Assembly: GCA_000708835.1 (NCBI GenBank)
Contig: DF236976.1
Coordinates: forward strand, 186,001 to 250,000
Direction: 5' to 3'
DNA: 64,000 bases
DNA from: Klebsormidium nitens
Taxonomy: Eukaryota > Plantae > Klebsormidiophyceae
Of this stretch, positions 3,001 through 32,419 are shown in pieces (the stretch's first letter is position 1; each line of letters starts with the position of its first letter). The notes beneath the pieces were generated by a model, which was not told where the DNA came from, did no database searches, and saw only the letters and a program-made list of their open reading frames with translations. The position numbers were made by a program, and so were the translations under genes.

Positions 3001-3373
3001 GCTCACCACCACTGAACAAGATTTCCACAAACAGTCAGCCACCCAACCAATGCAGACTCTCTCACTATTCCAGATTGTTTGTCCATCTGACCACCGCACC
3101 TTCCTCAACAATTTCAGCCTCTGGCACCACATTTTTGCTCAATTGGGCCTCATTTTCCGCACCTTCCTCTCCTGTGCCCTCCAAACCTGCCTGCTCCATT
3201 TTAACTCGCGCAGTTGCCTCCCCATCGCCGTTCTGTGGCCGCTTCACCTTGCGCTTCTTTGTTCTAACGGGCTCATCCCCATCGCTTGGCTTTTTCTTCA
3301 CTCCGATGCCTTTCACCCCCTTGCGCCAGCCCTTGCCCTGGCCAGCAAACGCAGATTTCTTGGCGCCCGTCAT
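1..3373 (-). CDS. Multi-exon gene, 3' end outside the window; acidic/basic low-complexity protein with a CHD6-9-like SANT domain
   Basis: Spliceable in-frame exons at ~3373-3100 (MTGAKKSAFAG...), ~2785-2475, ~2142-1705, ~1231-1064 (WTDPEREAFKRSLFLFGLGRLEKVQ) and ~697-510 (HMRQCHKKSRQLLGDVTDAAYQLLEQCLAHIEG). The W-x-x-x-E...F-G-x-G-R pattern followed by DV...LL..CL resembles the SANT region of CHD7-family remodelers. The start codon is uncertain. Confidence 0.6.
942..1042. repeat. Intronic tandem duplication, ~41-bp unit at 60-bp spacing
   Basis: agcctcttgacacaagcagccagagcaggcttctagctagt (942-982) versus agcctcttgaaacaagcagccacagcagcctcctagctagt (1002-1042). Confidence 0.85.
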
Positions 3374-3949
3374 TGCATTCCGTGAGGCACCCAACTCAGA
3401 TTCAAAACATGTGGCTTAAATGCTTCAAAGGTCCCTCCGGCTCGTCCTGTTGAAATCATCAAAGGTTGAACCGCCAACCACAACAGACTTCACCTCAGAA
3501 GAGGTCCTCAACACGGAAGATGTTCATGACATTCTGCCATAGCCTCGATGAAAATCCGAGCCTGAAAGTTGGAAATTGGAAGGTCAACAATGGGCGACTC
3601 AAGACTTGCACCCTGTCAGTGTGATAAAATCTGGTCCCAGAGTCATACCGTCATACGTCCATACATGTTGACCCCCAAACTGATTTGATCCATTATTCAG
3701 CTAATAATGTAGGCTTTCGATGTATTCCGGGGGCGCTGTTCCGCTCGCGATGTTCGATCTTGCCTTTTCAGTGCCATGCTTTCCGTTCCGCTCCAATCCA
3801 GCGCTCACCCGGATCTCCGCAAAGCCTCGCAGAACCGACCGGAAGATACTCAGTTGCAGCCCCGCAGGGAAGTCCATTGGTATTTTATATGACTGTTCAG
3901 GTTTCCGGGTTATAGGACCCTAGGCAATTATAAGCGCAGAGGAATTTGG

Positions 3950-8275: not shown

Positions 8276-8390
8276 TAGCCGACGAACCGACTAACTTCGA
8301 GTATAGCCTGTCCGATATCCTTAAACCCCACCACGAGCAGCTAGCAGAAGGCACCACTATTTAAGCTACATATCCCTATTCATGTCTCGA

Positions 8391-11300
8391 CTACCCGTAC
8401 AAACGCTCGAATATCCCCAACCATCCAGTCTTGCTTTGAGACTCTTTCGATGTGGAGGGCTGATCCGCCAGTTTTGCTACGGAATTGCTTTCGGACACCA
8501 GTTCCTCGTCCAACGGCATCGTTCGGCCTTGCTTGGCCAACTGCGAGCGGGCACTTAAAAGGTTAGTACTCGGCTCAAGAAATGGTTCAATTGGAAGTTT
8601 TCAAATAACGAAGGTTTTCTTTGACAAGCTCGTAGCGACAAATACAGTGTCCAATCCTTCGAACGTCAGTATTCGAAGACTTGCAGTGCGCATCTCGCTC
8701 GGCTTGACTTACACGAGAGCACAGACAAAAATGAAGGCGGGAGCAACTAAAAGCAAGGAGCTCCCGACGCCTCAAGGCCCTCTGATTCTGTCGGCTGACC
8801 TCTACCTCACTGCTTGTTGTCGCACTCTGTGCTATCGTTGTAACTCCTTGATGCGTTGCAGAATTTTATATGACCCTCGAAGTTTGGATTTGCATCGGTC
8901 CTAACCGGGGCATTGTAACGTTAAAAAGAGGACGCGCATAGCTCACTGCAGGGCGTACAAGCTTCTCGCTTTGAAAAGGTGTCGGATCTGGAAGCCTTGG
9001 AAATCAAACAAGCAGGCATGAACGCGGGAAACCGTCCTTAAATACAGAGAGCATATATAGCAGAGTGGCCCGGAAAGCTGTCCTTGTGACAAAGCGAGAT
9101 CAAAAACAAAATGGCGAGACTCAAGCCGCGAAGTAGTCGAGCACACAAGGCCAGAGGGCCTATGCAAGCAAAGAGATGCACCCATTTGACGAAGATATAA
9201 GTAGAGCGTAGAATCTGGAAGCTGAAAAGCTCACGCTGATGTGTTCCTGCAGCACTTCGTACGCTTGCGCCACGTGTTCCACCAGCAGCCGCTCGGGGAA
9301 CGCGTCCTCCAGGCTCACGTCCGGAACTGTGACCGCCCCGTCCGGCCACGTCATAAAGTCGGCGTCCGCAAGGTACAGGCTCGCTTGGACGTCCGGCCCG
9401 CAGCGCTCGGACGTCAGGAAGCGCACCGCGAAGCGCTTGAGCGCGTGCGCGAAGACGTCGGCCGAGAGCGGGCCCCCGTGCAGGTCCGTCGACGCCAGCA
9501 GCTCCCGGCGGACGTCCGGTGGGAGCGGCGCGCGGTACGCGGCCGCGTCGAGGCCGTCCGAAGACGCCAGGATGACGTCCGCGACGCACTCCTCTAGGGT
9601 CTCGTAGAGGGCCGCCACGTGGCGGAGCTGGAAGCCCCCGAGGAAGGGCTCTTCGAAGTGTCGAATGGCGTAGTCGGGGAGCCACTGCTGCGCGTATTCG
9701 ACGAGGCTTTGGTTCGGATCGCCGCCGGTCTTCTTGAGCATTGAGAGGGCCACGCCGAAGGCCCCGAGAAGGGCCGCGGTGTCGCGCCGCGCGGCCGCGA
9801 GCGCACGGAACGCTCGCGCGCGTTCCGGTGAGAAGGTCTCCTGGGGGATCTTCTGGGCGACGTCGGACAGCAAAGTGGCTGACACGTGGCGGAAGAGCTC
9901 GAGGCGGTAGGGGAACTCACGGATGTTGTCCTGGAGACGGTTTGAGGACCCTCGATCAGGTCAAGGCTTGTGGGTTAGCGTTACGAGCGTTTAACCTTGA
10001 CCTGAATTCTTTCTGCATCAATGCAGTGCGCAGCTCATTCAAAAACAGCGAAAAACGCTAAGTTTTAAGTCGAGACTGACTGTGAGATACTCGGTGTCAT
10101 TTAACGACGAGTTTCCACGAATCAAGACGAAACAGCTTCCTAGCAGTCTACAGGATGCCTGGTTTCAAAACACTGGCTGAGGCCCTCAAGTGATTTGGTA
10201 TTAAGCCAGATTAACATGCCAGCATTTCGATTGATTTGCATTCAACCAGGTCCATTGATCCGGCAAAGTACCATCAAAACGGCATTAGGCGATTGGTGGT
10301 AAGCATTGGATGCATAGGCGATCATGCATCCGATACGGTGCCTCCGAAAGTCCACCTTTTCAAGCACAGTCCACAAAAAGGTAAGGATTTGGAAGAACCT
10401 GTCGCCACACACCGACGGATCTTCATAACACCAGCACAGGAGCCAGCCGGAAGGACCGCAAGAACTCGGCGCTCGTTCGCTGCTTTTTCGCTTGAAAGCC
10501 CCGTTGAATCCAACTCTTCCGAAGCTTCGTCGAAGAGGCCAGCCGAGAGCTGCCCAGCAGAGCTCACCGTTTGGAGGAGCGCCTTTCCGGCGACCAGCGC
10601 TCCCGCGAGCTCTGCCTCGATACCGCCGAAGTCGTACAGCACTTCCTGGCCCCGCCCGAAGTCGGGATGGCAGCAGCTGTGCCGCTCGTACAGCGACTCG
10701 TCTCGCACGTAATTGATCACTTGGTGGGGCTGCGAAAGAATCAAAACCTGATGGTATGAGCGAGTGAATTGGATTCTCGATGATCTCCGCTTTTGCAAAC
10801 GGAAGCTGCCGTGTTTGGCAATCCCACTGGTCAGAAGGTTTTCTGAGTAAGCATAGCTTTTTGGCAGCCGGAAGACTGAGTAGATCCGTCACGCTATGTG
10901 ATCGGCCTCTGCTCCAAGCAATTCTTTAAGGGATTACCATCTGCGGCGACCGGTTCAGCACGCCCACACCATGAAAGACTTTTTTAAGAGGATCCTTGTC
11001 GTTCTATGAGCCACTTCTGAAGGCAATCCTGAAGAGATTCATGCGCCCAAGCAATCTCATCCGTGGCTCCTATCGAATGCGCTTTTTGCACGTTCATCTC
11101 CAAACGGGCTCTCTAAGACGACTCTTAGGAGTCCATCGACCGCTCTCAGGAAAGGGATACTCAACGATTCAAAACAGCAACATCTCCGTTTTCTTCGATG
11201 ACTTCAAGGCCCTACTTACCTGCACGTCTTGCAGCGCCACCTCCGGCAGCTTGCCCGCGCGCTCCGCCCCTGTTCCATACTGCAGGTCCCGAAGCGCCGC

Positions 11301-14300
11301 GCACCCCCGCGCGGCCGCGTCAGCCGCGGCGCCCAGGAGCGCGTTCTGCCTCTGCGCGAGCGCGTGTATCATCGCGCACAGGAACACGCCGGGCTCGCGC
11401 GTTTCGACGCAGCTGAAGGCCAGGGGCTGGGAGGGGTCCATGGGCGGAGGCGGGGGCAGATCTTTACACTGCCAGCGCAGCGGTTCGGACCGGAGGGCGT
11501 CCCAGGCAGCGGTGAAGCGCTGAAATTGGGACCGGAGGAGAGGCCTGAGGAAGACAGAAAAGGTTAGTCAGCAATGAAAGGGGAGCGAAATTGACGGCAG
11601 AGCCGACAAGAATCTTGAACCTCGGCAAACGAGGCATCATCCAAGGCGCTCGACTACTGATAGCGCTGGTTCAACAATTATTTGCCGCGGTTGTTGCAAA
11701 GAACGATGCATGAGAGGACTTATTAAGAACGTGATGATATCGGGACTTGGTGGATGTGGGCTCAAGATGCTTGGAGGAAGGTGAGTAGCGAGAAAGAATA
11801 TGCACCCCACATGGGATGGAAGCATTGTAATAGAATCAGCATAACCGATTCAGCATATTACCAGGTTGACAGGAGACGAGTCGACTAGCACCTTAAAAAA
11901 CATTCCTCCTGCATCGGCATTGATCGAAAGTTCGTAACGGGAACAGCCTTCATGGAGGCGACTTTTCAGACTGCTTTCAGGGCGTTCGGGTCAGAAACTA
12001 GGGGTTGCTTCCGTGCGCAAAAACCCTGGCAAATCTCTGGCAAGAAGACTTTCAAGAAACCATTCAAATAGACTGAGACCGTGTGGTACGCCTCACCTTT
12101 GTCCGAGACGCTCCAAGGCCTGCTCCACGGACGTCCGCTCCGCCTCCCGGCGGTCCACCTGGTTCCCAAACCGGGTTAACACCTGGTTACTCCACTCGAC
12201 CAGCGGAAACAGCTCCTTAACCAGCTCCAACTGGTCTTCCTGCTCCAGGAACGCCCGCAGAAAGGGGTACCGGTCGTTGTTCTTCGCGTCCAAGAGGAAC
12301 GTGGCTTGGAAGTGAGAGAATGATGGGCGGCCACGTGTCCGCAGCAGCCGCGGCCGCCACTCCGCGCGGTACTCATTCGTCATCGCGAATTCCGTCTCCT
12401 CAATCTCCATCTTGAGAGCCCTGGAGCGGATTCCGGCGGAGCTCTCTTCCGTTCCCTTGTCACGAGTCAGTGCCGCCAAGACGGACTGCGGACGCGTGTC
12501 TTGCGTCACAGGACGTACGAACTCGTCCGCAAACGCCGTCTCCCAAACCTCGACGCTCCCAGGCACGGTGAGCTGGCCGGGAAGTTCGGAGAGTCCGCTG
12601 TCCGCCGTTCCGCTGATAGCCTCCCCCAGGGAGCTGAGGACGGAATGCACGACCGCCGACGCCTGCTGCACGTCACACGCCAGCTGCTGCCGCAGGAGGC
12701 GCCAGTCGTTGCACACGTGGCGCTGCACCAGATCACGTGCCTTGCCGTCATCCTCCGCTGAGCGGTTTCCGAGAACTAGACCGGAGAGCTCCCCCGGGGA
12801 ATGAAAACCGAGCTCAGAGCCGACTAGAAGGGCGGAGTGGGTGAGGAAGTGGAGCATGCGGAAAGCGACCGGGGAAAGGTTCCGGACGGTGTGCGAGAGA
12901 GAAGACACGCTCTCGGGCGTCTCTTGCAGATAACCTGCACAGAAAGGCACGTCGATAAGGCGTGCGTCGGGAAAAGGATGCTTGTTTAGCGCCAAAGTCA
13001 AAACCCTGAAAGCATTGGGCTGGACAACAAACGTACGAGAAGATAGTGATGCAAATCGTCAAAAAGTGAGGAAAGTAAACAAGCTGAGTTGGGAGAGAAA
13101 GTAGTGAGCTACTTGTGAATCTATGAACTTACGAACTTGCTTGATTTCCTTGCTTGCTTGCTTACTGACACTTCTTGCTTCTGCCCCAAAAGCTATGTAC
13201 GCATACACCTGTCTTTCCAAGACAATTCCGATTGCCGCCATGGGTTTCACATGAAGGAAAGGTTTCTCTGATAGCATCCGGAAGCCGCCAGATTACGCTG
13301 AATATGAAAGTGATTGAACGAAGCAACGAAAGTACTCTGCGCAGTTGAAGAATGCGCTCGCAGGAGCTTGGGAACGCTTGCGTGACCCAGTAACTAAATG
13401 GTCGCAATCCCTCACTGCTCAGAATAGGCACACCACGTCTGCACTTTAAAAGAGCTGACGAGTATCATCCAATCACTAAGAGCCCTCATAAGCTGGAAAG
13501 AAACAGACCCTACCAAGGAACGACATAAGAAAGTTGGGTCTTACCCGGGCGCTCCGTTCTTTCGCCCCCCGCAGCCATCGTCGGCTGTCCGTCCAGCCTC
13601 TGCAGCCCCCCGCCCGGGTTGAACGCTTCATGGTACCCTCTACCAATCTGGTTACGGCAGTCGGGGCACTGGGCTATGTCATTGATGGCCCCGCAGTTCC
13701 CCACAAAGAACAGCGCCCCGCACGCGCACCGGTAGCTCGTCAGCGCCTCGCGCCGTCGCAAGAGGTTCCCGGCGACCGCCTCCATGTCGGCCGCGCCCGC
13801 AACGAAGAAGTGCGCCGCGGCCGCGGCTGGGCGTTTCGCGTACTGGTCGAAGGGGGTTTGGACGCGCGGGTTCGGCGCCAGGACCAGCGCGAGGTGCGCG
13901 CACGCGGCCGCGAGGTGCTGTCCGGAGGCGTCGCCGTCGGGACGCATGAACAGGACGCTGTCTCTGCCGGTGGAGAAGGCGTTGTCCGCGAGGGCGACCA
14001 GCCCGCGCGCGACGCTGCCCGGCAGGTCGCCCCTTCGGACCGCGGACTTGAGAGCGGCGGCCGCGCGCTCACGCGGCCGCCCGAGGTCGCCTGCGGCTCT
14101 TTGGACGTAGAGAGAAGACGCGACGCCGTAGAGAAGTCCAAGCTGGATGGAGGGGTCTGCGGCGCTCTCTTTCACCAGCGCGTTGACGTCCTCTGCGTTG
14201 TTGCGCGCTGCGGCGAGCTCGAGACTGGCGCTCACTCTATCGAACACCGCGGAAACGTCTTCGCTGCGCGGCTGAAACGGGTCGAAACCGAGGGCCTTCT

Positions 14301-17300
14301 CCGCGCCAGCTGCGCTCCTCCAGGAGAGCGAACGCAGGGTTTCTTGAAAAGAGTCGCTCGGTACTTTGTCCCCCAGCCGTTCGATGATCTCGCCGACGGA
14401 CTGGAGCGAAAAGCGCTGCCGGAGCGTCTTCAGGATAAACACCAGGAGGGCGTCGGTGCCGGGCGCGCCCGCGGGAAGCTCCCGCCCCAGCGCAGTCACA
14501 ACCCGCTCCTCTAGTTGCTCGACATCGACGGTCCAGGCGTCCCGATCTCTGGTGTGAGCGGCCGCCGCCGCGAACGCGCCCAAAAGCGCGCGCAGAAAGG
14601 CGGCCGCGCACAGGTGGCGCAGGATGCCGTGAGCATCGGCTCCGGCGCGGAACAGCCTTCCCGCTGACGTCAGCAAGGGGATGAGCCTTCCAACCTTCCA
14701 CCCGTCGGCTTCTGAAGTTGCCACGTCACCCCCAACCTCCTTTGCCACGAGCACGGCTTCGGGACCCAGCGAGCCGAACAGCGCTCCTTGCATGACGTCA
14801 CAGACGAGCGCTTCGAGAGGGCCGTCCACGTCATCTGTCCACGTCCTCTGCTCTCTGAGTGCGTCTTCCAAAACTTTCAGGCAGAGCGGAACAGCGGATC
14901 CCCCGTCGTCTAGCAGAAGCGTCCCGGGCAGGTCCACCTTTTCCCCGGCCACCGTCAGCAGGCGCTCCAGCACGGGCTTCAGGAACCGGTTGAAACGACC
15001 GGCCTTACAGATGAACCGCGCAACGAGTGGACTCGTTCGTTTGTCCGAGAGGCTCGCGCCGAGCACTAGCGCCCAGAAACGATCCACGGAGTCTTCGAAG
15101 CGCGTCCCGGCCGTGACACTTTCCCGCAGACGGGTGAGCACGTGCTGAATCTGGTCCAGGCCCTCCGCTTGCGTCAGCAGGTCCGCGCCCCTCGTGCGCG
15201 CGATTTGGAGCAGCTCGCGCAGTGCCGCGCGCGTCTCTTCGCCTTCGAACGGAAGCGCGACGACCGAGATGAAGTCGCGCATCAGCGTCAGGAGCGCGCG
15301 CCACCCCTCGAGCGCGCGGCCGCGCGCCGCGCCCATGGCCGCGATCCGCCGCAAGACCCTGCTGGCGGCCGCCAGCCAAGCCTCCAAACCCCCAAGCCGC
15401 GCGAGCACGCGCTCGTCCGGCAGAAGCGCCTCGCTGAACGCCCCCAGCAAGAACGCGTCGAGTGATTCCAGCGGCTGTTCCCGGCGACGGGTTCCGTCCC
15501 ACTTTCCGAGAAGCTCTTGGAAGCTGAGCGCCCGGTTGCACGCCCCGAGCAGATTCAATCGCTCGGCGATGGCGGTCTCGAGCTCCCAGCAGGCGGCGTG
15601 CAGGGCTACCGGGTGCCCGGGGATCTCTGCCGACTGCTCCAGCAGCCAGAGGAAGGCCTGGCGAGCCTGCTCGGGGGAAAGGCCATCGACCGGGGGAGCT
15701 TGCAGGCACACGAAGTCAAGCACGTACTGGGGGAAGTAATCTTCGACCACCCGGGCCAGCGTCCCGGGCACCGAATTGGCGACCGCGACCAGGAGTTTGC
15801 CCGGATCGGTCGCCCTCGGACCAGAAACCGGACCGTCCGCATCCTGCGTCCGCTCCGACTCGTACAGCGTCCGCAGCTCCTCGACGGCCTTGCAGTAGAG
15901 CCCGCTGAAGGGCAGCGCCAACGGCAGGCGCGGCGGGAGCGCGTAGCACTCGAGGCCGCGCGGCTCGGGCAGGGTTTCGAGGTTTAGCGCGCGCTCGTCC
16001 AGGATCAGATCCAGCCACGCGGCCTTCACCTCCGGCGGCGCGTGGAAGTAGCCGGCGAGGGCCCCGTTCCGCTCGAGGGCGCACAGAAGCATGGCCAAGG
16101 GGCGGTGCACGCTGTCCTCCACCCGCTTCAACAGGGCCTCCCGCAGCGACGGCGACGTCAGCAGCGCGCGCTGGCTGCACGCCACGTGGCGCTGCCAGCC
16201 AATGGCGTCGCCGTTCGCGCGCAGCCAGTCGACCGCGCGCGCGCCGAGCGCGCGCAGGAGGTCCGCGTCGCCGGACACGGACGCCACCATGGTGCGGACG
16301 TGCGCTGCGGACGCGTTGGTGTTGTCGTACTTGATGCACAAGAAGGCCTCGTACAGCTTGCGGCGCGCGACGGAGGCGAAGGGGCAGCCCGGGGATTGGA
16401 GCAAGTCGACCAGGCTGCCTCGGCACAGGGCCCTGCACAAAGGATTGAGGAACGAATATGTCCACAATGCCTAAAATCTGTATTGCGCAAAGGACTCTGA
16501 TTGAGTGGATGCCGGATGATGCCGTGGGTCTTCACATTCTGGGATGTGATTTGGCAAGCCCCACCGCCTGATTCAGGGGTTCAAAACAAGCGAAAAGTCC
16601 AGCTTTTGTAATGTCGTAATCAACGCTTTTCTTAGAAGGATTTAGCGTGGAGTTGATCCAGTCTTGATCGTGCAGGAGAGTACTGGACGAGCATACTTTG
16701 ACCGGCGCTGACCTGGAACTGCATCAATTGAGCGTCATACAGCAGCTTTGGTGGACCGATCACACGGACACAAGAAGTGACTTTTTATGACAGAACTCAT
16801 TCAGAATTACCACTATCCTCCCAAACATTCCCTCACTAAAGATGATGTCCTCAAGTTGTCAGCAAGCCTTTGCAATCTCACCTGACAGAATTCTCCGACG
16901 GCTCCAAACAGTCCACGGCCGCCTGCCGCCAGCCGCACAGGAAGCTAAACCCCCGGAACCCTTGCGCGCCCGTCTTGGCGGCCCTCTCCATGTGGATCAC
17001 CAGCACCACGTGCTTCTGCGCGGCCGCGGCGGGCGCGGTCGCGGAGCGCGCGGCCGCGTGCTCGTCGACGAGGAACTTTGCCAGCTGGATGTGCGCGCGG
17101 TCGGCACGTGCCTCGCCCTGGAGGACGAGCAGCGCCGCGTCGGACGTCCAGAAGTGGTCCACGCGTGCGGCCAGGTGGCGCTCCGCGGTGAACGCGCTCA
17201 GCTGCTCGACCTGCGGGTGGGGTTTGAGGATTTAAAGATCTGAGGTTCTGAGGGTGGTGTTGTTTGACGGGTTTGATTGGTTGAGGATCTGAGATTCATA

Positions 17301-23300: not shown

Positions 23301-26300
23301 TTCTGAGGGAGATCAGCGTCATCTTGAGAAGGTTGTCCGCGGTTAGCGCGTACGGGGGCAGGTTCAGCTCGCCGTGCCTAGTTCTCACCACTCTCTCCAG
23401 CCGCTCGTGGAGCTCGTCGATCGGCAGCGTTCGGTAGTCGGGGAGACGGGCCTGGCCGAACGTCTGGCTGTTGAACAGGCGTTGGATCTCGAGCGGAACT
23501 TGGGTTACGTCTCGGTAAAGCGCGGTTACGGTGTTCGGGTCTTGGGAGTGGAAAATGACCAACAGATGGTTGCTCTGCCGCCATTGAATCATGTCCTGGA
23601 CACGTGTCGCCAGCCGCTCCGCCGTGCCCCCAGATGCCGCGCTCGCGGCCGCTGTGCCGGAGGGGCGCACCGCGCGCAGCGCAAAGTCCCGTGCCACGGC
23701 GACCAGTGATTGGACGAGGAGCGAGCGGACGTTTCTGGGGGCGCCCATGTCCGCAAGGACGCCGGACTTGAAGAAGACGCTGTCCGACAGGTGTCCGAGC
23801 TGGGCGGCTAGAACGTTCAGGAACGTGTTGAGGAGGGAGAACGACGGCGCGGCCACGTGCGCCAGAAAGTGGCGCTGCAGGAGGTCCTGACACGTGTCGG
23901 CCGGAAGAGGCGCCGCGTCCCGGCAGGCGCCCGAGAGGATGAGGTCGTCGCGGTCGACGCGCCCGCTCTCGAGCGCGTGCAGGTACACGCACACGGTCCG
24001 TACCGGGCTGCTGACGTCATCGCTGACGCGGAGGTTGGTCAAGTCCCAGGTCAGGTGCTCCCGGCGGAACCAGTGGCAGATGGGCAAGTCTTCGAACAGC
24101 CGGTTCCGCATGTCGTTCGCGAGCTCGACGAAAACGGAACGGAATCCGGCGCGGTAGACGCCGGCGGTCGTGCAGCTGAGGGAGCCCAGGATGAGCAGCT
24201 CGAAGAGGGCGTTGCTGACGTGGGCGGGGTCGTCGAGGGTGCTGACGTCAGCGTGGAGGCAGCCGGTTGCGCCGGGGCCCAGGGCTTGGAGCCGGGCGAT
24301 GATCTGGGTGCGCGAGGCGGCGCCGGTCACGGACAGGCAGTGGAGGGAAGCACCCTGCAAAAGTGATTGTGTGAGGTTCAGGCTCCAGATATGGGACTTT
24401 CGTCAGCATATAGTTTTCCGGTATGCGGAGGCTTTGTGCCGACGCATCGCCTTGCTGGCTTGCTAAGTCAGCAAGCCGCGCGATGCGTTGGTAGGAAGTC
24501 CTGTGAAAAGACGATAACGAGGACCCGTCTCGAGAGCTACTCCGCAATTATCGCGTCGCGAAAGGCCTTTTTGGGTGCCAAAAAGTAGACAAAAACCAGT
24601 TGTCATCCCATCATTTATCAGAGGATTCGATGTACTCTGCTTCTATATAGCTCGTTCTGTCCGTCAGATCCCTGTCTACCAAGTCAGATGCACAAATCTT
24701 CTGCACCCGACTTAACAACAATGTAATTATTGATTAGAGCACGTCTGCAACGAGTGCTCAAGTTCGTTTGTCAGACGAGTCTGATAGTCGGACGATTCTG
24801 ATAAGGATTCCCTTTTCACAAGAAGTGACCTTTTGCTTGCGGTTCTACCACGACCTCAGGACTGCCATTTCGAAGCAGGTCTCAAACTCTGTTTGCATTG
24901 GAAGAACATGATTGGGCTGACTTCAACCTGGAGATGCGATCAGCCTTCTCGACCCACGCAAATTTAGTTGAGCTGCCTAGGCCGGAAAAAAACAAAAAAA
25001 ACCCACTGAATGTTCGGTGCTCAGAATCACCGTTTCGTGATCTGCTCCCCGGAGGTTGAGCACTTGCCTCGCATAAGGCTGCTAAAGATTGTCGAGTCCG
25101 ACCGATTTGAGAAGAGACGCAGAATGTCTCACAGCTGATAGCCAACAAGCGGCTCAGCGAAAAGCCTAGTTTCGAATCCTTGCCCCAGACAACATGACTT
25201 CTTTCACAACCCACAAAAGACTCCTTCAGAAGCGAGATGTACTTCCTGCTTGGACAGGCTTTCCTCTCCCGTCAAAACTCAGAAAGTAAGTCGTTCCGAC
25301 AATTCAGCATGCCCCACCTTCTGAGCCGCCAGCTGTCGGATCGTCTCCGTCTTGCCGACCCCGGGCCTGTCTGACGTCACCACGACCACCTCCGGCAGGT
25401 CCGGCACCGCCCCCAGCAGCGGCTTCAGCTCCTCTGACGTCAGCTTCCCAACCATACTCCGCACCGGCACCCCAAAGCTCTGCCGTTTGCGGTCACCCGA
25501 GACGATGATTGCGAGCTTGAAACGGCTGACGTCGGTCGTTTTCGCCGCCTTCTGGAGCTCCTGAGCCAGCAGCGTGTGGCACGTGAAGTCGAGCTGGTCC
25601 GCGAAGGCGACGCAGAAGAGCGGATCGTCGGCGGAACCGGTCCAGCGGAACCGGAAGCAGCGGAGCAGCAGCAGGTGCGCCTCCTCCCAGGACGTCCGAG
25701 CGTCGCACAGCAGGACGTCCGACGGCTGCGGCAGCTGGCCCTGGTCCAAGTACAGCGACATGACAGCTGTCAACACTTGGCCTGGCTCATCGACGGCGCC
25801 CACGAAGACCTCCCCAGGCGAAACGGAATCCGCCGGAAAGGCGCTGCCTCCGCCAAGTCCAAACGGCCGTCGGGGGCGGTTCAGGCCCTGGAAGGCGCTC
25901 CTCAGAGCACCCCCAAGGAGGCGAAGCCTATCCCCGGGCTCAGTGGGCAGCTTTTGTAGGGTTCGCTTAAGCGCTCGGTCTTCGGCGCTCGGGTGAATCC
26001 ACGTCAGCAGGTCACGTGCGTGGCGCTCCGCTTCCGCTTCCGCTGTCCCCGTGAGCAGGTCCCACAGTGGCCCCAGCTGGTGGGACGCGCAGAAGTTGAG
26101 CTCGTAAAACTCCTCGCGCGAGGCCGCGAGGGCGGCCTTCCATTCAGACAGCCGGCCGCGGAGCCCCTCGAGCGTCCGCACGAGGTCCAGGTCCGCGAAC
26201 CGGGCTGTGAGCGCCCAGGAGCGGAACTCGAAGTGGCCCGCGGCCGCGAGCGCGGCCGCCGTCGCGGCCAGCTGCTGCGCGGCGTCGGCCTGCGCGATGA

Positions 26301-29300
26301 AGCGCGTCAGGAGCGCGCGCACGTCGCCGCTGACGTCATCGAAGCGCGGCCGCGTGGCGAGCGCGCCCGCGTTGACGAGGAGCAGCGCGCGGCTGCGGAG
26401 GTCGCCGATCTCGGCGCTGCTGCACACCGTTTTGCCGCGAGCGCTGGGGTAGGAAACGCTGAGCACGCACTCCGGGCCCCGGGTTTTGTCCACCCCTAGT
26501 TGCAGCTCCCCCGCGTCCATGGCTGCGGCTACCCCTTCCAGCGTAAGCTCTCCCCGGTTGGCCACGTTTCTGTACAGCCTCTGGAGCCCCCACGCGTTTT
26601 CCACACACTCGTGCAGCTTTGCGACCATGCCCCCCTCACTCCCGGCAAGCAGCTCATCCACCGTGTTTAAGAACTCACCCAGGGTCTTGCCCCGGGCACT
26701 CTTGAGCAGCCCGCGCATGAACCGTTGGTGGACTTCGATCAAGTCGGAAACCGTGGCCTCCCGGATGATCTCCCCCGAGTGCTCCTCAACTGCGTCGATC
26801 ATCAGCCTCAGATCCTCGCCCCCGGCTTCTCTCAGAAACGAGACCAGCGTCTCCCCCCGGGACAGTTCCCCGAGCGCATCCCGCACGTCCTCGCGCATGT
26901 CTCCGGCCACGCCTTCCAGCTGGTAGAGAGCCCCGGCCAGGCCGGACAGCGTCAGCTCTGCCACGTCATCCGCAAACACCTGCTTGCACCGCTGCGCGGC
27001 CTCCAGGAAAAAGTCGCCATCTAGTTCGAACAGTCGCGCGACCGCCAGCAGCTCTTCCGCCAGCTCCTGCAGCCGCGCCGCCTGCAGGAACGCGCGCACG
27101 GCGGCCGGCCCGAGCGCGAGCGCGTCGCAGTCGCCGGGCCAGCCGTTCCGCTCGGCCGCGCGCCGGAACTCCGCCTCAACTTCTGCCACCGGAACGCCCT
27201 GCCAGAGCTCCTCCACTTGGGCCAGCGGCAAATCCTTCCCCTCAAAGTGCGCGCGCCACCGCTCCTCAAACGCGCCAATCGCGGTCGGTAGGAGCTCCCG
27301 GGCCGCGGCCGCGACGGTGCGGTCCGCGGCCGCGGGGTTTAGGAAGTTTGGGAAGGTTTTCGATTCGGCGGGCTTCAGGAAGTTCGGGAAGGTTTTGAAG
27401 TCGGCCAGGGGGGTCAGGAGGGGAAGGCAGTCCAGAATCGGCCGGTGCAGCTCCCACTCCTGGGCGCTTCGAATCGAGTCCAGGGTCAAGATTCCGGTCG
27501 AGAAGAGCGTCGCTTTGGTGATGACGTCATCTCGGTAGAGTTTGAGGTCGGTGGGGCGCAGCGGCGCGAAGAAGGTGCGCAGGGTGGAGCCGACGACGTC
27601 GAGGCGGCGCTCGTAGTTGGCGAGGGCGGTCCGCAGAGAACTACAAATAGAGGGCACGAAAAGTAAGAAGAGGAGATTCAGGAGGGGAGGTTCGTAAAGC
27701 AAAGCAGCAAGAGCCGAGGTGAACAGAGAGAGACCGTTTTGATTTTTTTCCTGGCTGTCGATGTTACCAAAGTGCGATGAAAGACAGAACATTCTAGTCT
27801 ACTTCTGAAGACAAAACAAGATACGTTGTGGGACTGATAGACCTCCATACAAAAAGCAAGTTAATAAGTTTCGATCCCTACATCCATCCTTAAATATTGG
27901 GCCGGCCCTGACGTGTCGCTGTTTTGTGCAATATCCAGCTTAGCATCCGCTTTGTCAGAGGACGCTTCAAAGGAGCCTCTGAGAGCACTTTCATCTGCTC
28001 TCCGCAGCTCCGGATCAGCTCCGGATTGCAAATAACCCACGAGAATTATCCGAGTCAACTAAGCAGAAATAGCTTAGTAAGTTGCATCTCTGCAAGACCG
28101 CTTTCTATTGTGCACACTCAAGAGTTTTTTCTCGCACCCAACGAAAAAAGGACGATCGTGACTTGTTGCTCAAAATGATTTCGGCGAGCTTGGATAAATG
28201 TAGACAATGTTGGAGAAGCACGAAAGCGGGCGGAGATGCAAAATCAAGTAAGCGGCCTACCTGAGATCCTGGTGACTTTCGCCGCAGCCGGCCGCGCGAA
28301 ACGCGGCCGCGATGCGCTCTTCCGGCACCGCCAGCACGTTCCTCAGCTCTCGGACAGCGATCGTTCCGTCCGCCATTCCGGCGGACGCTTTCCGGACAGC
28401 CTCCCCTGCTTCCTTCACCAGAGGGTGGCTCTTCACCGCATCGCATTCCGCTGCTGACGCGCAGAGGGGCCAGAGTTCCGCGCAGTACACCGCTGCGGCG
28501 CTGCCGAGAGCGGAACAGAGGGGACGGACGAAATCCAAGAGGTGGACGACTAGCTCCTCTGCTTGCCTGCGAAGGCGAGGAAAAGTAATCAATGACTTAA
28601 AGCCATCTCATGAACGAGTTTTGGTCAGGCAGCCGGCTGACCTGGATGAAAGGTCAGCATCGACGAAAGTTCGGCCTGTCGTTTTCGTGGCCTCGGTTTG
28701 GTTTTGGGTGCAAATGTGTGCATTAGCACGGGGTGACCGTGGAGCAGATAGTTTTAAAATGATACAGGATGAGCTGCAATCGTCGAGAAGTGGCCCGTGC
28801 CTAGGTTTAAAAAGGGAGTACACAGCCGCTTGAAAACGGGATAGATGTTCGCAGTGCCGCTTCAACCTACAAGAAGGGAACCAAGTAGACAGGAGATCGC
28901 GTTCAACGACATGATCCAAAAGTGATTTCGAAAATAACTCTGCTCCTAGAGACGGAAGCGGAGCTGCCCACCAAGCTTGCTTACATATCCAAGTATAGGG
29001 ATGTTGGTTCTAAGTTGGTTGCCTCAATCAGCAAAAGCCCATGGGAGGCAAACTCGACCGAAACCAGTGGCTCCTTTCTTGTGTTATTGAGGAGCAGCCC
29101 TCTGTTCCTTGTTCCTCGAAGACCGCAATCGTTGCTTTGCCCGAAAGTTGTGAAAGCAATGTTTTTTCGAAGAATTACGAATACCACGGATCCACTTATT
29201 CTACACACACCACAGCAGTTTCCCTCATTAACGTAGTCCCAGAGGACTTCATGAGCGAGTTTGCCCAGTACTTTTGATATAGTGACCGAACACGTCAAAA

Positions 29301-32300
29301 GCATGTCTCTTTCGACAAAGGATCGATGGCAGACCTGGCACGAGACTGATAACACTTGTGGATTACTAAGAGCAGACAACTTTGTGAAGCTGCATTTCAG
29401 AGACCCAGCCGTTGTTTCAATATAAGCAAACGATTGATCCGCCCAGCCACGCCAACCGCGCAACTGCGCCCTCGTCATGCCAGATCCCCTCATCCATAAG
29501 AGCCACAGGGTATGCGATTACTCACCTTGAGGCCACTTGGACCGAACCATCCTCCCTCGCTGACGTCAGCAGCCGCACCGCGGCCGCCGCCTTGTCCAGG
29601 TCCTCCGCGAACGAGGCCACGGCGGTGCGGGCGACCCCATAGAAGGCGTCAGCAGTCTCCGGTCGCCCTTCGCCAGCGCACTTGAGGACGTCCGACGGTG
29701 CGAAGTCGGACGCCAGCTTGGCGGCGTGCTCGGACAGGCGCTCCACCACCGGGCCCCACTCTTCCGACTCCAGTTGCTTGACTTGCCGCTTCAGCTCTTC
29801 AGTTTTCTCAAAAGCGCTTAGGGGCGTCTGCGTCGCTCGGTCGATTGTCCCTGAAACGTATGCCAAGCACGCGGCTTCCACGGCAGCCGCCAGAACCCGC
29901 GCATCCCGCGTTCCGTTTCCGGCCGGCCCCGTTCCGTTGTTGTCACCGCTGTCTTTGTCCAGAGAAAGCACCCGGGAGAGCAAACCGGGCAGCAGATCCA
30001 GCGGCTCTCGAGCCCCAGACTGCGCGATACTCCGCAGAAGCGCCACGGCCGGTTTCTTCGCCGCGAACAGCTCTTTCGTGAAGACGAGCTTCGAGAGGGT
30101 TTGCAGGTTTTCCGGCGACCACTCGGCGGGCCCTTTCGCGCTACGGATCACGTGGCCCCGCAGCGCCTCGATCAGTCCCGGGTGCTGCGCGAGCGGTGCC
30201 AGCTTCTGGCACAGGTGTAAAAGCGCCCGGTCGATCCCAACGGCCCCCCGCGTCTGGAGCAGCGCCGCGAGACGCCGCGACACGTGTTTTGCGATCGGCT
30301 TTTCACACTCGCCTACCCGAGGCATCTGGAGAACTTCCAACAGAGCCGCCGCGCACGGTGCGGAAACAATCACCCGGCCGACGATCAGCGGGAAGTCGTC
30401 CCCCGAGCAGGACGCAAGAAACGGCAGCGCGGCTCGCACGTCGGCGCAGAACTGGTCTCCGTCCGTGGGCGCGCCTTCTCGGACGTCCGCAAGGAAGCGG
30501 AGCTCGGCGTCCGCAGCGGCCAGTCCCGGGAGGTGGCGCAGCCAATCGGATGCCGGGGCGGTCGCCCGCACGAGCAGGGCGGGGATTGGGCGCAGCGCCT
30601 CCCTGACCGCTGACGTCAGCGCCACGTCACCGCTGGCGTCAGCGAGGCCCTGCAGCGTCGCCATGACGCGGCCGCCCAGCGCCCGGTTGGACGCGGCCGA
30701 CGCAGAGGATACGGACCGCCACGGACGGCTTTGGAGGTCCAGGGCCCGTCCGAAGATGACGCACGCGGCAACGCAGAGGTAAACGCGTGCGCGCGCGTCT
30801 TGGGGCTCGGGGGCGGGGGCTTCCGGTTCGCAAGAGTCGTAGAGATCGACCAGTCCCTCTGCAATCGATGCGGCGACGCTCGCGCTGAACCAGGGCGCGT
30901 TGCAGATCTGCGCATGGAGCCCGCGCAGCTCGTCGAGAACCTCCGGCAAACCCTGGCCGTCGAGCAGTTCGCCAAGCAGCATGCCCGCGTACGTCAGTGC
31001 CGCGTCCGCGTTGGTGGGCAGCTGGGCCGCCACGTGTCGCTCCAGGAGCAGCCCCTCGGCGAAGCAGAACTGGTGCCGCCCCGGCTGCAGCCGATACCCG
31101 CCCCGCGAGACCCTCTCCTCCTCTGCCTTTGAGAAAACGTGCTGGAATCCGCCGCGCTTCCGGGCGACCACGAAGTTGAACCGGAGGCGTGACTGGTCGC
31201 CCGCCCCGCGCACCCGTACCCGGTCCGAAGACCAGAGCGTGCGTTCGTAGGGGGCTACGAATAACGGCACTCGGAGGGGCCGGCCATTCTCCTCGGTGAA
31301 GAGAGACCCGACTGCAAAGACTTCGAAGAAGAAACCTCCCTGGCCTTGGGCGACCTCCTCCGGCAGGACCACGTGAAAGGCGACCGTCCTCAGCTTCGCC
31401 ACCTCTTGGTTGGTCGCCTTCGCTCCCCCCCCCTCATTGCCCACGTCAGCTTTCAAGCGCTTCGAGGAGTGATCAGGCCCTTCCGACGCTTCTCCTCCTT
31501 CCGTCCGCTCCTCTTGCGAGACAAGACGCCGCGTCGCTCCCTTGCCTCTGAGTCCTTCCGAGATCAACGACGCCACGTGCGCAGACTCCACCACGTGGGC
31601 AGGTTGGCTAAGCCGGGGGCTTTCTTCCTTGTCGGCGGATTCTGCGACGCGAGCCACGTGTTCCGTAGTTTCTGCCACGTGGGCGCTTCCGATTGGGGTC
31701 TGGCCCACGTGGGCGGTGACCCAGTCGAGCCCACTTGCGAGGACGCCCGCATATGAGAATGGGCGACTGCTCTGGACGGGCTCTTTGGACTCGGGGGACG
31801 CCGCGGGAGGGGTTCGAGCTCCGGGTGCCAACGGTTCCACGTCAGCATCGGACTCTGGTCCTTCCACTGTCACACTCTTGCCTGGTGAGTCGCGAGCAGC
31901 GGGTTGGGTGCCAGACAGAAGGGAGGAGCTCCAAAGTCCCCCGAAAAGGGAAGATCCAGAGCCCAGCTCGAAGGGGTTTACGGATCTCGCTCCAGATCCG
32001 GTCTCTCCCCGTTCGTCTAGCAAAAGCTTCTTCTTCCGTTCGTCTGCCCAGTTCTGGCTCCCGAAGTAGGCGCCCTCTTCCCAGGCCCGTTTTCCCCGCC
32101 ACATGCTCGCATCAAAGGGGAGGGGCCCGCCAGCAATAGACGATGGGAAGCCCCAGTTGCTCGGGGAGGAAGGGCTCGAGAATTGGGGGGTAGAGAAAGC
32201 GTCCGGGGACTGGGGGTTGGAGAAAGAATTGTGGGCCTGGAGGGGCAGACATGGCTGGGGGCGCAAGTCAAAAGACTCGGAAGAAGATGGAGACTCCAAG

Positions 32301-32419
32301 TTGAACGCGGCGCTTCCGGTTTCCTGGGTTTCGTGGCTTGATGGGGCTGTGGGTTTCCTTGAGTGGTTGAAGCTCTGCTTATCTACATGGTCTCCAGCCT
32401 GGCCCTCGTCGCCACCCAT
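8391..32419 (-). CDS. RNF213: RNF213/mysterin-like giant AAA+ ATPase - E3 ubiquitin ligase (~4,900 aa, ~17 exons)
   Basis: Phase-consistent GT-AG exons: 32419-29526, 28566-28261, 27640-25318, 24354-22187, 21567-21459, 20982-20869, 20303-19612, 19185-18739, 18203-18038, 17646-17542, 17210-16882, 16432-13545, 12934-12097, 11544-11220, 10729-10568, 9930-9235 and probably 8540-8391. RNF213 signature motifs: VIMGETGCGKT...LLDEVNT...CNPYR, LVYRVNELP, SLRDV, IGKPGCSKSL, SYQGSESSTSEGI, VLLDEVGLAE...NPLKVLH, VGISNWELDPAKMNRA, GLRDFYSLIK, RNFGG, LYDMLNQNY, PFLNRFEKH, plus an RZ finger. The last exon is uncertain (alternative 8846-8832). Confidence 0.93.
13630..13740 (-). other. RZ (RNF213-ZNFX1) zinc finger within the RNF213-like gene
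   Basis: Translation YRCACGALFFVGNCGAINDIAQCPDCRNQIGRGYH fits the RZ consensus YxCxxGHxxxxGxCGxPxxxxxCxxCxxxIGGxxH. Confidence 0.9.
27334..27396 (-). repeat. In-frame tandem duplication (36-nt period) in the RNF213-like exon
   Basis: Two 27-nt units, 24/27 identical, encoding KTFPNFLKP-AES-KTFPNFLNP. Confidence 0.9.

What the first reader, a model, noticed from the sequence alone, without database searches (positions are those of the whole stretch)
8391..32419. Complete RNF213/mysterin-like AAA+/E3 machine in a green-lineage (streptophyte-alga-like) genome
Seen: a ~4,900-aa reading frame assembles from ~17 phase-consistent exons with no stops or frameshifts. It shows the whole RNF213 order: disordered N-arm, stalk, dynein-like multi-AAA core, E3 module with RZ finger, C-terminal domain. 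Established: animal RNF213 is an innate-immune E3 that ubiquitylates bacterial LPS to trigger xenophagy, and is best known in metazoa; I know of no counterpart in land plants. Inference: the flanking genes (plastid-targeted proteins, plant-type AACT) place this copy in an alga, suggesting an ancient or acquired cell-autonomous ubiquitin-immunity system in streptophyte algae that land plants lack. This is the best candidate for an undescribed system in the window.
Basis: partly seen in the sequence, partly recalled or inferred. Interest (0 to 1): 0.92.

Follow-up and report, generated by a model that had tools for sequence, protein, structure and literature searches.

The report
RNF213-like giant ubiquitin ligase in Klebsormidium
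This alga carries an intact, transcribed 4,903-residue relative of the human immune and Moyamoya-disease protein RNF213, but mosses, ferns, other green algae and many protists have it too, so it is an old eukaryotic machine kept in part of the plant lineage, not an algal novelty.

Summary
Observation confirmed. On the minus strand, 17 GT-AG exons (ATG 32419, stop 8393-8391) give one 4,903-aa frame. RNA contigs confirm the last five junctions, and one 15.4-kb RNA contig matches the model's length.

From about residue 1,100 to the end the protein is colinear with solved RNF213. The AAA model's best Foldseek matches are RNF213 (E 1e-30) versus dynein (1e-12). The hinge/E3 model's eight best matches are RNF213; nothing else reaches E 0.001. 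Walker A/B motifs of both active AAA modules and the RZ-finger catalytic Cys/His are present. No RING was found here or in 167 long relatives.

Land plants do have counterparts: mosses (Physcomitrium, Ceratodon) and ferns (Ceratopteris, Adiantum). So do Mesotaenium, Mesostigma, Cymbomonas, Cyanophora, Amoebozoa, Naegleria, chrysophytes, Glomeromycota and many invertebrates. No seed plant appeared.

Fourteen of 16 introns coincide with the moss gene's, nine of them exactly. Amphioxus and Cymbomonas genes are nearly intronless. This argues for vertical descent within streptophytes and against contamination or recent transfer. dN/dS against a sister species is 0.22.

An immune role is inference only. 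Verdict: new member of a known family, apparently undescribed in plants in the searchable literature.

The parts
29526..32419 (-). Exon 1 (aa 1-965). Start codon at 32419. Lineage-specific N-terminal region; aa 1-400 have a low-complexity, disorder-like composition.
   Evidence: The frame opens 26 codons upstream of the first ATG. Conserved with sister-species contig L001 at 82% nt, dN/dS 0.33. No Pfam, PDB or family similarity.
28261..28566 (-). Exon 2 (aa 965-1067), lineage-specific.
   Evidence: The acceptor CAG and donor GT are conserved in L001, and conservation stops at both sites. The frame is kept. dN/dS 0.26. Not confirmed by RNA.
25318..27640 (-). Exon 3 (aa 1067-1841). Family-wide conservation starts here, at about aa 1,100-1,170 (linker/stalk and entry to the AAA ring).
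   Evidence: PDB RNF213 E 1e-7. phmmer against relatives reaches E 2e-72 from aa ~1093-1170 onward.
22187..24354 (-). Exon 4 (aa 1842-2564). AAA core, aligned to human RNF213 residues ~2196-2782.
   Evidence: PDB RNF213 E 5e-50, against midasin 2e-18 over only 70 aa. AF2 model pLDDT 80. Foldseek: RNF213 E 9e-31 with TMq 0.70, dynein 8.5e-13.
23248..23271 (-). Walker A of the first active AAA module (GETGCGKT, aa 2203-2210). Its Walker B (LLDEVNT) lies at 23086-23109.
   Evidence: These columns are invariant in alignment A2.
22210..22233 (-). Walker A of the second active AAA module (GKPGCSKS, aa 2549-2556). Its Walker B (VVLLDEVG) lies at 20902-20925 in exon 6.
21459..21567 (-). Exon 5 (aa 2564-2600).
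   Evidence: 66-76% identical to relatives by tblastn. Both flanking introns sit at the same column and phase as in the moss gene.
20869..20982 (-). Exon 6 (aa 2601-2638).
   Evidence: 100% aa identity to the sister species.
19612..20303 (-). Exon 7 (aa 2639-2869), AAA core continued.
   Evidence: PDB RNF213 E 1.5e-19, human ~2877-3097.
18739..19185 (-). Exon 8 (aa 2869-3018).
   Evidence: 46-60% identity to relatives. Intron position shared with moss.
18038..18203 (-). Exon 9 (aa 3018-3073).
   Evidence: dN/dS 0.06.
17542..17646 (-). Exon 10 (aa 3074-3108).
   Evidence: Conserved block in L001, consensus splice sites, dN/dS 0.09. No tblastn match to distant relatives.
16882..17210 (-). Exon 11 (aa 3109-3218).
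13545..16432 (-). Exon 12 (aa 3218-4181). Hinge, RING-less E3 module and RZ finger.
   Evidence: Family profile against PDB RNF213 gives E 1.5e-32, with two colinear stretches. AF2 model pLDDT 79. In Foldseek the eight best matches are RNF213 entries (seven at E 6e-9 to 7e-7, one at 2.4e-3) and no other protein reaches E 0.001. No RING pattern or RING Pfam match.
13630..13734 (-). RZ finger (aa 4118-4152, YRCACGALFFVGNCG...CPDC...H). C4131 aligns with the human nucleophile C4516 and H4152 with H4537. C4120, C4140 and C4143 align with Zn ligands C4505, C4525 and C4528. Human H4509 is Ala here, and C4122 two residues earlier is the likely replacement.
   Evidence: Pfam PF20173 E 5e-10. Residue-level alignment to human RNF213. 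The same CxC form occurs in most relatives that have an RZ finger.
12097..12934 (-). Exon 13 (aa 4181-4460), C-terminal domain.
   Evidence: Both junctions read from RNA. PDB RNF213 E 5e-4, mouse chain 4508-4742.
11220..11544 (-). Exon 14 (aa 4460-4568).
   Evidence: RNA junctions.
10568..10729 (-). Exon 15 (aa 4569-4622).
   Evidence: RNA junctions.
9235..9930 (-). Exon 16 (aa 4623-4854), end of the C-terminal domain.
   Evidence: RNA junctions. PDB RNF213 E 6e-3, human ~4990-5128. Relatives reach E 1e-60 to 1e-89 over aa 4181-4857.
8391..8540 (-). Exon 17 coding part (aa 4855-4903), with the stop codon at 8393-8391. The 3' UTR continues below 8300.

Best explanation
The locus is the Klebsormidium orthologue of a pan-eukaryotic family of giant RNF213 (mysterin)-type proteins. 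Shown: it is an intact, spliced, transcribed gene under purifying selection that encodes 4,903 aa. From about residue 1,100 the protein is colinear with solved RNF213. It has a dynein-like AAA ring with complete Walker A/B motifs in the two modules that hydrolyse ATP in RNF213. It then has the RNF213-specific hinge and E3 module without a RING, an RZ finger that keeps the catalytic Cys and His, and the C-terminal domain. Its gene structure is shared with moss orthologues, so it was inherited vertically within streptophytes. Inferred from mammalian RNF213 biochemistry: ATP binding to the AAA core switches on a RING-independent, transthiolating E3. An E2~ubiquitin charges the RZ-finger cysteine (C4131 here), which passes ubiquitin on to a substrate that may not be a protein. 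The lineage-specific, partly disordered ~1,100-residue N-terminus would supply targeting. The cellular role is not shown. I put cell-autonomous defence against intracellular microbes or viruses at roughly 0.3. Lipid-droplet or membrane-surface quality control is about as likely.
For: Gene model and RNA. Selection: dN/dS 0.22 overall and 0.05-0.2 in the AAA exons. RNF213 identity by sequence: all colinear. RNF213 identity by fold: with RNF213 far ahead of dynein for the AAA model and the only protein below E 0.001 for the E3 module. Motifs. Colinear over ~3,800 residues with full-length relatives from amphioxus, a mollusc and Cymbomonas. Streptophyte orthologues. In the ML tree Klebsormidium sits with Mesostigma, Mesotaenium, mosses and ferns. 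Nine of 16 introns share column and phase with Ceratodon and five more lie within 1-3 columns. The amphioxus gene has 5 introns and the Cymbomonas gene 1. At least 18 RNA runs from six studies hold the AAA exon.
Against: Only five of 16 junctions were read from RNA. The streptophyte clade that includes Klebsormidium has weak support (43), and a sister-to-Metazoa position is not rejected (p-AU 0.39). The AAA-core tree alone therefore cannot settle vertical descent; the intron evidence carries that claim. One Zn ligand of the RZ finger (human H4509) is substituted. No RING and no CBM20 were found. No activity, localisation or induction data exist, so the mechanism and any immune role are extrapolated from mammals. 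The sister species' copy carries an in-frame TAA in the AAA exon, so the gene may be dispensable in some relatives.
Confidence: 0.85

Rival explanations
1. The gene is foreign: contaminating animal or protist DNA in the assembly, or a recent horizontal acquisition by Klebsormidium.
For: The highest raw identities of the AAA core (~45-50%) are to invertebrate and unnamed metagenomic proteins. The AU test does not reject a position as sister to Metazoa.
Against: The gene has 16 GT-AG introns, and 14 coincide with those of the moss Ceratodon gene. Amphioxus and Cymbomonas homologues are nearly intronless. A sister-species genomic contig holds the same gene with exon-only conservation. RNA runs of six studies hold it. 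The metazoan clade (support 100) excludes it. A scan of 185,579 bacterial and archaeal genomes gave no credible homologue.
Confidence: 0.03
2. It belongs to another dynein-like AAA+ family (midasin/Rea1 or dynein) and only resembles RNF213 in its P-loops.
For: Pfam sees only generic AAA_5/AAA_7 signatures. Midasin matches at E 2e-18 over 70 residues.
Against: RNF213 matches span 565 residues at E 5e-50. Foldseek gives RNF213 E 1e-30 with TMq 0.70, against dynein 1e-12 with TMq 0.5. The non-AAA hinge, E3 module, RZ finger and C-terminal domain match RNF213 and no other protein below E 0.001.
Confidence: 0.01
3. It is a true RNF213-family enzyme, but its job in this alga is housekeeping, such as lipid-droplet or organelle-surface regulation or protein quality control, rather than immunity.
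For: From established knowledge, mammalian RNF213 also acts on lipid droplets. The gene is expressed without any known challenge in many RNA runs. It is kept under purifying selection with no sign of an arms race in the core (dN/dS 0.05-0.2). It lacks the CBM20 carbohydrate module that PMC11549300 ties to pathogen sensing.
Against: The N-terminal third evolves fastest (dN/dS 0.33) and is lineage-specific, as expected for a target-recognition region. Patchy retention and loss across eukaryotes and plants is more typical of defence genes than of housekeeping genes.
Confidence: 0.4
4. The locus is a decaying or mis-modelled gene, meaning a pseudogene or two adjacent genes wrongly read as one.
For: The sister species' copy has an in-frame TAA in exon 4. 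Eleven junctions lack direct RNA confirmation.
Against: There is no stop or frameshift across 14,712 nt. A single 15,410-nt RNA contig has the length the model predicts. dN/dS is 0.22. Catalytic motifs are intact.
Confidence: 0.03

Closest known systems
Vertebrate RNF213 / mysterin (cryo-EM structures 6tax, 8s24, 9jw1, 9g08)
   Same: Giant single chain of similar length. Colinear linker, dynein-like AAA ring with Walker A/B in the two active modules, hinge, E3 module fold, RZ finger with catalytic Cys and His, and C-terminal domain.
   Different: No RING; the region that holds it in human RNF213 is the unaligned gap in the profile match. No CBM20 detected. The N-terminal ~1,100 residues are unrelated. 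RZ Zn ligand His4509 is replaced by a CxC arrangement. Core identity is only ~22-23% in the structural alignment.
Uncharacterised plant 'RZ-type domain-containing proteins': Physcomitrium patens A0A7I4D517 (4,704 aa), Ceratodon purpureus M758_7G045200 (4,842 aa), Ceratopteris richardii KP509_01G064300, Adiantum capillus-veneris GOP47_0011499, Mesotaenium ME000219S03302, Mesostigma Mv22211
   Same: Same architecture and length, RZ finger, no RING Pfam family. Same clade in the ML tree. Fourteen of 16 intron positions are shared with Ceratodon.
   Different: About 28-30% identity over the full length. The second Walker A is GKPGCSKS in Klebsormidium, the form seen in most non-plant relatives examined, but GKPGSGKT in Mesotaenium, mosses and ferns. 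The moss gene has 23 introns against 16 here.
Invertebrate and protist RNF213-like proteins (amphioxus, echinoderms, molluscs, cnidarians, Physarum, Pelomyxa, Naegleria, Paratrimastix, chrysophytes, Glomeromycota, Cymbomonas, Cyanophora)
   Same: 40-50% identity across the ~1,150-residue AAA core, colinear to the C-terminus, and no canonical RING.
   Different: Neither Pfam nor the local searches found an RZ finger in most of the animal copies examined. Some fungal or unnamed copies carry CBM20 or kinase domains. The amphioxus and Cymbomonas genes are nearly intronless.
ZNFX1
   Same: Shares only the RZ finger (Pfam PF20173), a ubiquitin-transferring zinc module.
   Different: ZNFX1 is an SF1 helicase with no dynein-like AAA ring or RNF213 E3 module, by established knowledge. 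It was not compared here beyond the Pfam family.
Dynein heavy chain and midasin/Rea1
   Same: Six-AAA single-chain ring. Second-best structural matches for the AAA exon.
   Different: Much weaker matches (E 1e-12, TMq ~0.5; midasin over only 70 aa). Neither has an E3 module, RZ finger or C-terminal-domain counterpart.

Membership tests
RNF213 (mysterin) family | Dynein-like multi-AAA ring in one polypeptide, closer to RNF213 than to dynein or midasin | tested here: met
   PDB phmmer gives RNF213 E 5e-50 over 565 aa, against midasin 2e-18 over 70 aa, plus E 1.5e-19 for exon 7. Foldseek gives RNF213 E 9e-31 with TMq 0.70, against dynein 8.5e-13. The six units were not counted one by one.
RNF213 (mysterin) family | Intact Walker A and Walker B in the two catalytic modules (AAA3 and AAA4) | tested here: met
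   GETGCGKT with LLDEVNT, and GKPGCSKS with VLLDEVG. The AAA3 motifs and the AAA4 Walker A lie in invariant or nearly invariant columns of A2, which ends before the AAA4 Walker B. They sit in the stretch aligned to human 2196-2782.
RNF213 (mysterin) family | RNF213-specific hinge and E3 module fold (E3-back, shell, core), which PMC7311170 reports has no other counterpart in the PDB | tested here: met
   Profile against PDB gives E 1.5e-32. For the AF2 model the eight best Foldseek matches are RNF213 entries (E 6e-9 to 2.4e-3, TMq 0.41-0.54 over 855-1,084 columns), and no other protein reaches E 0.001.
RNF213 (mysterin) family | RZ finger with the catalytic Cys (human C4516) and His (H4537) | tested here: met
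   Pfam PF20173 E 5e-10, above the cut-off. In the alignment to the human sequence, C4131 and H4152 are in register, and three of four Zn ligands are kept. H4509 is replaced, with a Cys two residues earlier.
RNF213 (mysterin) family | C3HC4 RING finger inside the E3 module | tested here: not met
   No RING pattern in this protein or in 167 relatives over 3,500 aa. No RING Pfam family (Pfam columns). The human RING region falls in the unaligned gap. The RING is dispensable for RNF213's E3 activity (PMC7311170), so I treat it as a feature of the vertebrate branch, not of the family.
RNF213 (mysterin) family | C-terminal domain after the RZ finger | tested here: met
   Weak but colinear matches to RNF213 (E 5e-4 and 6e-3). 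Strong matches to family members (E 1e-60 to 1e-89).
RNF213 (mysterin) family | [quoted passage not shown] | tested here: not met
   No Pfam match in exons 1-3 even at E 1. Some relatives carry CBM20 (P0271, P0276). No structure was predicted for the N-terminus, so a divergent module is not excluded.
RNF213 (mysterin) family | ATP-dependent, transthiolating E3 activity, including on non-protein substrates such as LPS | not testable with these tools
   Needs biochemistry.
Streptophyte orthogroup of RZ-type giant AAA+ proteins (moss, fern, Mesotaenium, Mesostigma) | Shared gene structure and common clade | tested here: met
   Nine introns at the identical column and phase and five within 1-3 columns of Ceratodon introns. 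One clade in the ML tree, but with support of only 43.

The most novel reading that the evidence does not exclude
RNF213 is not an animal invention. It is a RING-less, RZ-finger-only AAA+ ubiquitin machine dating back to early eukaryotes. Streptophyte algae, mosses and ferns still use it as a cell-autonomous defence that marks intracellular microbes or viral factories, possibly on non-protein molecules, and seed plants lost it. If so, non-seed plants have an immune arm with no equivalent in the angiosperm models, and the ancestral function of RNF213 could be tested genetically in Physcomitrium.
Probability: 0.2. Interest if true: 0.8.

Novelty: new member of a known kind. Interest (0 to 1): 0.5.

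Why it matters
The papers I could search and read treat RNF213 as an animal protein. [quoted passage not shown] I found no paper that links it to algae, mosses, ferns or plants in general.

This locus and the relatives it led to show three things. First, the whole machine minus the RING exists across eukaryotic supergroups. Second, within plants it is kept in streptophyte algae, mosses and ferns, and was not seen in seed plants. Third, the RZ finger, not the RING, is the module that recurs outside vertebrates.

Together these give a route to the ancestral function of a human disease and immunity protein in tractable organisms such as Physcomitrium and Klebsormidium. They also flag a possible defence or membrane-surveillance component missing from angiosperm models. 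The Klebsormidium gene on its own is one more family member, already visible as unnamed database entries in related species.

Tried and rejected
1. I first forced exon 2 into the only stop-free frame of the conserved block. That gave only GC donors. The alignment with the sister species showed the true CAG acceptor and GT donor, and the other frame.

2. My consensus scoring picked the wrong acceptor for intron 14 and found no good pair for intron 15. RNA contigs corrected both.

3. Bacterial origin. Many ~4,000-aa intronless homologues from metagenome assemblies looked prokaryotic. Their flanks are gene-poor and hold a reverse transcriptase, and they nest inside cnidarians in the tree. Two scans of 185,579 prokaryotic genomes found only generic P-loop hits plus one fragmented match in a doubtful MAG contig.

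4. The AU test was meant to exclude a position next to animals, and it did not (p 0.39). I relied on intron positions instead.

5. Vertebrate RNF213 sequences could not be brought into the tree, because no tool returned them as usable records. Whether vertebrate RNF213 nests inside the invertebrate clade is therefore untested.

6. Pfam on flanking ORFs was uninformative. The organism's identity comes from the scan's earlier notes.

7. No tandem 'splice-junction echo' arrays turned up in this gene.

8. The window's own annotated protein was not found in either protein library.
Full report
**What is in the sequence**

The finding's span holds one minus-strand gene. Four long open stretches and tblastn with full-length relatives gave 16 colinear coding anchors. 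A genomic contig from a sister species (L001, from a Logan assembly) aligns only in exon-sized blocks at 80-93% identity.

I chose splice sites by frame, consensus and that conservation. The resulting model has 17 exons, 16 GT-AG introns of 331-963 nt, an ATG at 32419 and a stop at 8393-8391. It gives 4,903 codons with no internal stop.

**RNA support**

At least 18 RNA runs from six studies hold more than 90% of the sampled words of the AAA exon. I laid four runs on window 8300-14299. The contigs give junctions 13545|12934, 12097|11544, 11220|10729, 10568|9930 and 9235|8540. These corrected two of my predictions.

One 15,410-nt contig spans all five junctions and extends 12,070 nt further upstream. 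The model predicts 11,786 nt of CDS there, which leaves a 284-nt 5' UTR. The other eleven junctions were not read from RNA. Against the sister species, dN/dS is 0.22 overall. It is 0.33 in exon 1 and 0.00-0.21 in exons 3-11, which span the linker and the AAA core.

**What it encodes**

Every conserved piece matches solved RNF213 in colinear order:

| Exon | Match to human RNF213 | E-value |
|---|---|---|
| 3 | ~1837-1912 | 1e-7 (best, to mouse RNF213 chains; the human chain scores 1e-4) |
| 4 | ~2196-2782 | 5e-50 |
| 7 | ~2877-3097 | 1.5e-19 |
| 12 | ~3601-3678, and via a family profile ~4069-4542 ending in the RZ finger | 1.5e-32 |
| 13 | ~4572-4800 | 5e-4 for mouse |
| 16 | ~4990-5128 | 6e-3 |

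An AlphaFold model of exon 4 (pLDDT 80) finds RNF213 structures first (E 9e-31, TMq 0.70). Dynein follows far behind (E 8.5e-13, TMq ~0.5). For a model of exon 12 (pLDDT 79) the eight best Foldseek matches are RNF213 entries (E 6e-9 to 2.4e-3), and no other protein reaches E 0.001.

Both active AAA modules keep their Walker motifs: GETGCGKT with LLDEVNT, and GKPGCSKS with VLLDEVG.

The RZ finger (Pfam PF20173, E 5e-10) aligns residue for residue with the human one:
- C4131 aligns with the nucleophile C4516, and H4152 with H4537.
- C4120, C4140 and C4143 align with three Zn ligands.
- The fourth ligand, H4509, is Ala here. A Cys two residues earlier gives a 'CxC' form.

The CxC form is the commonest among relatives that have an RZ finger. 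A few carry the vertebrate 'CPNGH' form.

There is no RING in this protein, in any of 167 relatives over 3,500 aa, or in their precomputed Pfam lists. The human RING region falls in the unaligned gap of the profile match. No CBM20 was detected. The first ~1,100 residues match nothing by sequence, and residues 1-400 have a disorder-like composition.

**Who else has it**

An exhaustive HMMER scan of 1.84 billion cluster representatives found 3,354 relatives of the AAA exon, 702 of them below E 1e-30. The best full-length hits are ~45% identical. Named members fall into these groups:
- Invertebrates: amphioxus, echinoderms, molluscs, brachiopods, cnidarians.
- Chlorophyte and glaucophyte: Cymbomonas (two copies) and Cyanophora.
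- Streptophyte algae: Mesostigma and Mesotaenium.
- Mosses: Physcomitrium patens and Ceratodon purpureus.
- Ferns: Ceratopteris (two copies) and Adiantum.
- Amoebozoa: Physarum and Pelomyxa.
- Other protists: Paratrimastix, two Naegleria species, and two chrysophytes.
- Fungi: Glomeromycota.

With fern and moss queries, the only plant hits among full-length proteins were mosses and ferns. No seed plant, liverwort, hornwort or lycophyte appeared among the best 120. Those searches see only proteins of 0.55-1.75 times the query's length, so fragmented gene models would be missed. The absence is provisional.

Prokaryotic genomes gave no credible relative. The many unnamed ~4,000-aa metagenomic proteins sit in gene-poor contigs and group with cnidarians.

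**Ancient or acquired**

An IQ-TREE analysis used 47 AAA cores, 1,123 columns and the LG+C20 PMSF model. It recovers animals (support 100), Glomeromycota, and Mesotaenium with mosses and ferns (support 100). Klebsormidium joins the streptophytes in the best tree, but with support of only 43. Holding it next to animals costs 4.4 log-likelihood units and is not rejected (p-AU 0.39). The tree alone does not decide.

Gene structure does. I mapped the annotated Ceratodon protein onto its locus, which gave 23 introns. Nine of the 16 Klebsormidium introns lie at the same alignment column and phase. Five more lie within 1-3 columns; four of these have the same phase, and the phase of the last moss intron could not be resolved. 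One of the exact matches lies in the poorly alignable N-terminus and counts for less.

The amphioxus gene has five introns and a single 4,121-codon exon. The Cymbomonas gene has one intron. Only the last Klebsormidium intron coincides with an amphioxus intron.

This pattern, together with the sister-species copy and the RNA data, rules out contamination. It also makes recent transfer very unlikely. The gene is the streptophyte orthologue of an old eukaryotic family.

**How it probably works**

This part is inferred, not shown. In mammals, ATP binding to AAA3/AAA4 activates a RING-independent E3, and the E3 module has no other structural counterpart (PMC7311170). [quoted passage not shown]

Every element of that core mechanism is present here. 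The simplest expectation is an ATP-gated transthiolating ligase that uses C4131. Its targeting would come from the fast-evolving, lineage-specific N-terminus. Whether it serves defence, lipid-droplet or membrane surveillance, or something else is open.

**Novelty**

Searches of the paper library found nothing that links RNF213 or RZ fingers to algae, mosses, ferns or Viridiplantae. Database entries for the plant proteins exist, but only as 'RZ-type domain-containing' or 'hypothetical' proteins.

The Klebsormidium gene is therefore a new member of a known kind. The wider points are the pan-eukaryotic range, the RING-less ancestral design, and retention in non-seed plants. These look under-described and are worth a focused study.

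Noticed in passing
L001:9926-9928 (equivalent to window 23466-23464): The sister species' copy of the gene has an in-frame TAA where Klebsormidium has CAG, in the AAA exon. This splits the called ORFs at L001 9925/10001. It could be a pseudogenising mutation, a strain allele or an assembly error. The other exons still show low dN/dS.
   Followed up: partly
Relatives P0001-P0367: None of 167 RNF213-like proteins over 3,500 aa from invertebrates, protists, fungi and plants has a canonical RING pattern or a RING Pfam family. The RING that names RNF213 looks like a late addition on the vertebrate branch. Vertebrate sequences could not be included to date it.
   Followed up: partly
P0271 (Diversispora, 5,677 aa) and P0276 (unnamed transcript, 4,646 aa): Some non-animal relatives carry a CBM20 domain, as human RNF213 does, while Klebsormidium shows none. 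P0190 (Diversispora) is fused to protein-kinase domains. P0271 appears to hold two AAA cores in tandem (match range 1495-4483).
   Followed up: no
L012 (amphioxus) and L013 (Cymbomonas) versus the window and L011 (Ceratodon): Intron density differs sharply between orthologues. The amphioxus gene has a single 4,121-codon exon and the Cymbomonas gene one intron. Klebsormidium has 16 introns and the moss 23. The last intron (Klebsormidium aa 4854, phase 0) is at the same column and phase in amphioxus.
   Followed up: partly
L002, L003 (ENA metagenome contigs of 2.5 Mb and 129 kb): Hundreds of intronless ~4,000-aa homologues in 'metagenome' assemblies lie in gene-poor DNA, with a separate ~600-aa ORF just upstream and a reverse transcriptase nearby. 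They group with cnidarians, so they are probably host (coral or anemone-like) DNA. IMG labels such as 'MoxR-like ATPase' are misleading.
   Followed up: partly
L004:6001-7702: The only 'bacterial' hit (38% identity over 387 residues) is in a record titled Stappiaceae MAG 'chromosome 48'. It lies in no ORF of 250 aa or more, so it is probably eukaryotic DNA mis-binned into the MAG.
   Followed up: partly
window 22210-22233 versus P0051, P0061, P0272, P0274: The second Walker A is GKPGCSKS in Klebsormidium, Cymbomonas, Cyanophora, the animals and most of the protists examined. It is GKPGSGKT in Mesotaenium, mosses and ferns, and GRPGSGKS in Mesostigma. This could serve as a derived marker for the Zygnematophyceae-plus-embryophyte clade.
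   Followed up: no
window 8511-9264 and 10908-11202: Low-depth RNA contigs run unspliced through intron 16 (depth 20 against 300) and lie within intron 14 (depth 4). This fits pre-mRNA or minor intron retention.
   Followed up: no
window 12347-12368 and 12678-12698: A different 5,174-nt RNA contig of run X11 shares two ~21-nt stretches with exon 13, on opposite strands, and has long unmatched ends. It could be a chance match or a related transcript.
   Followed up: no
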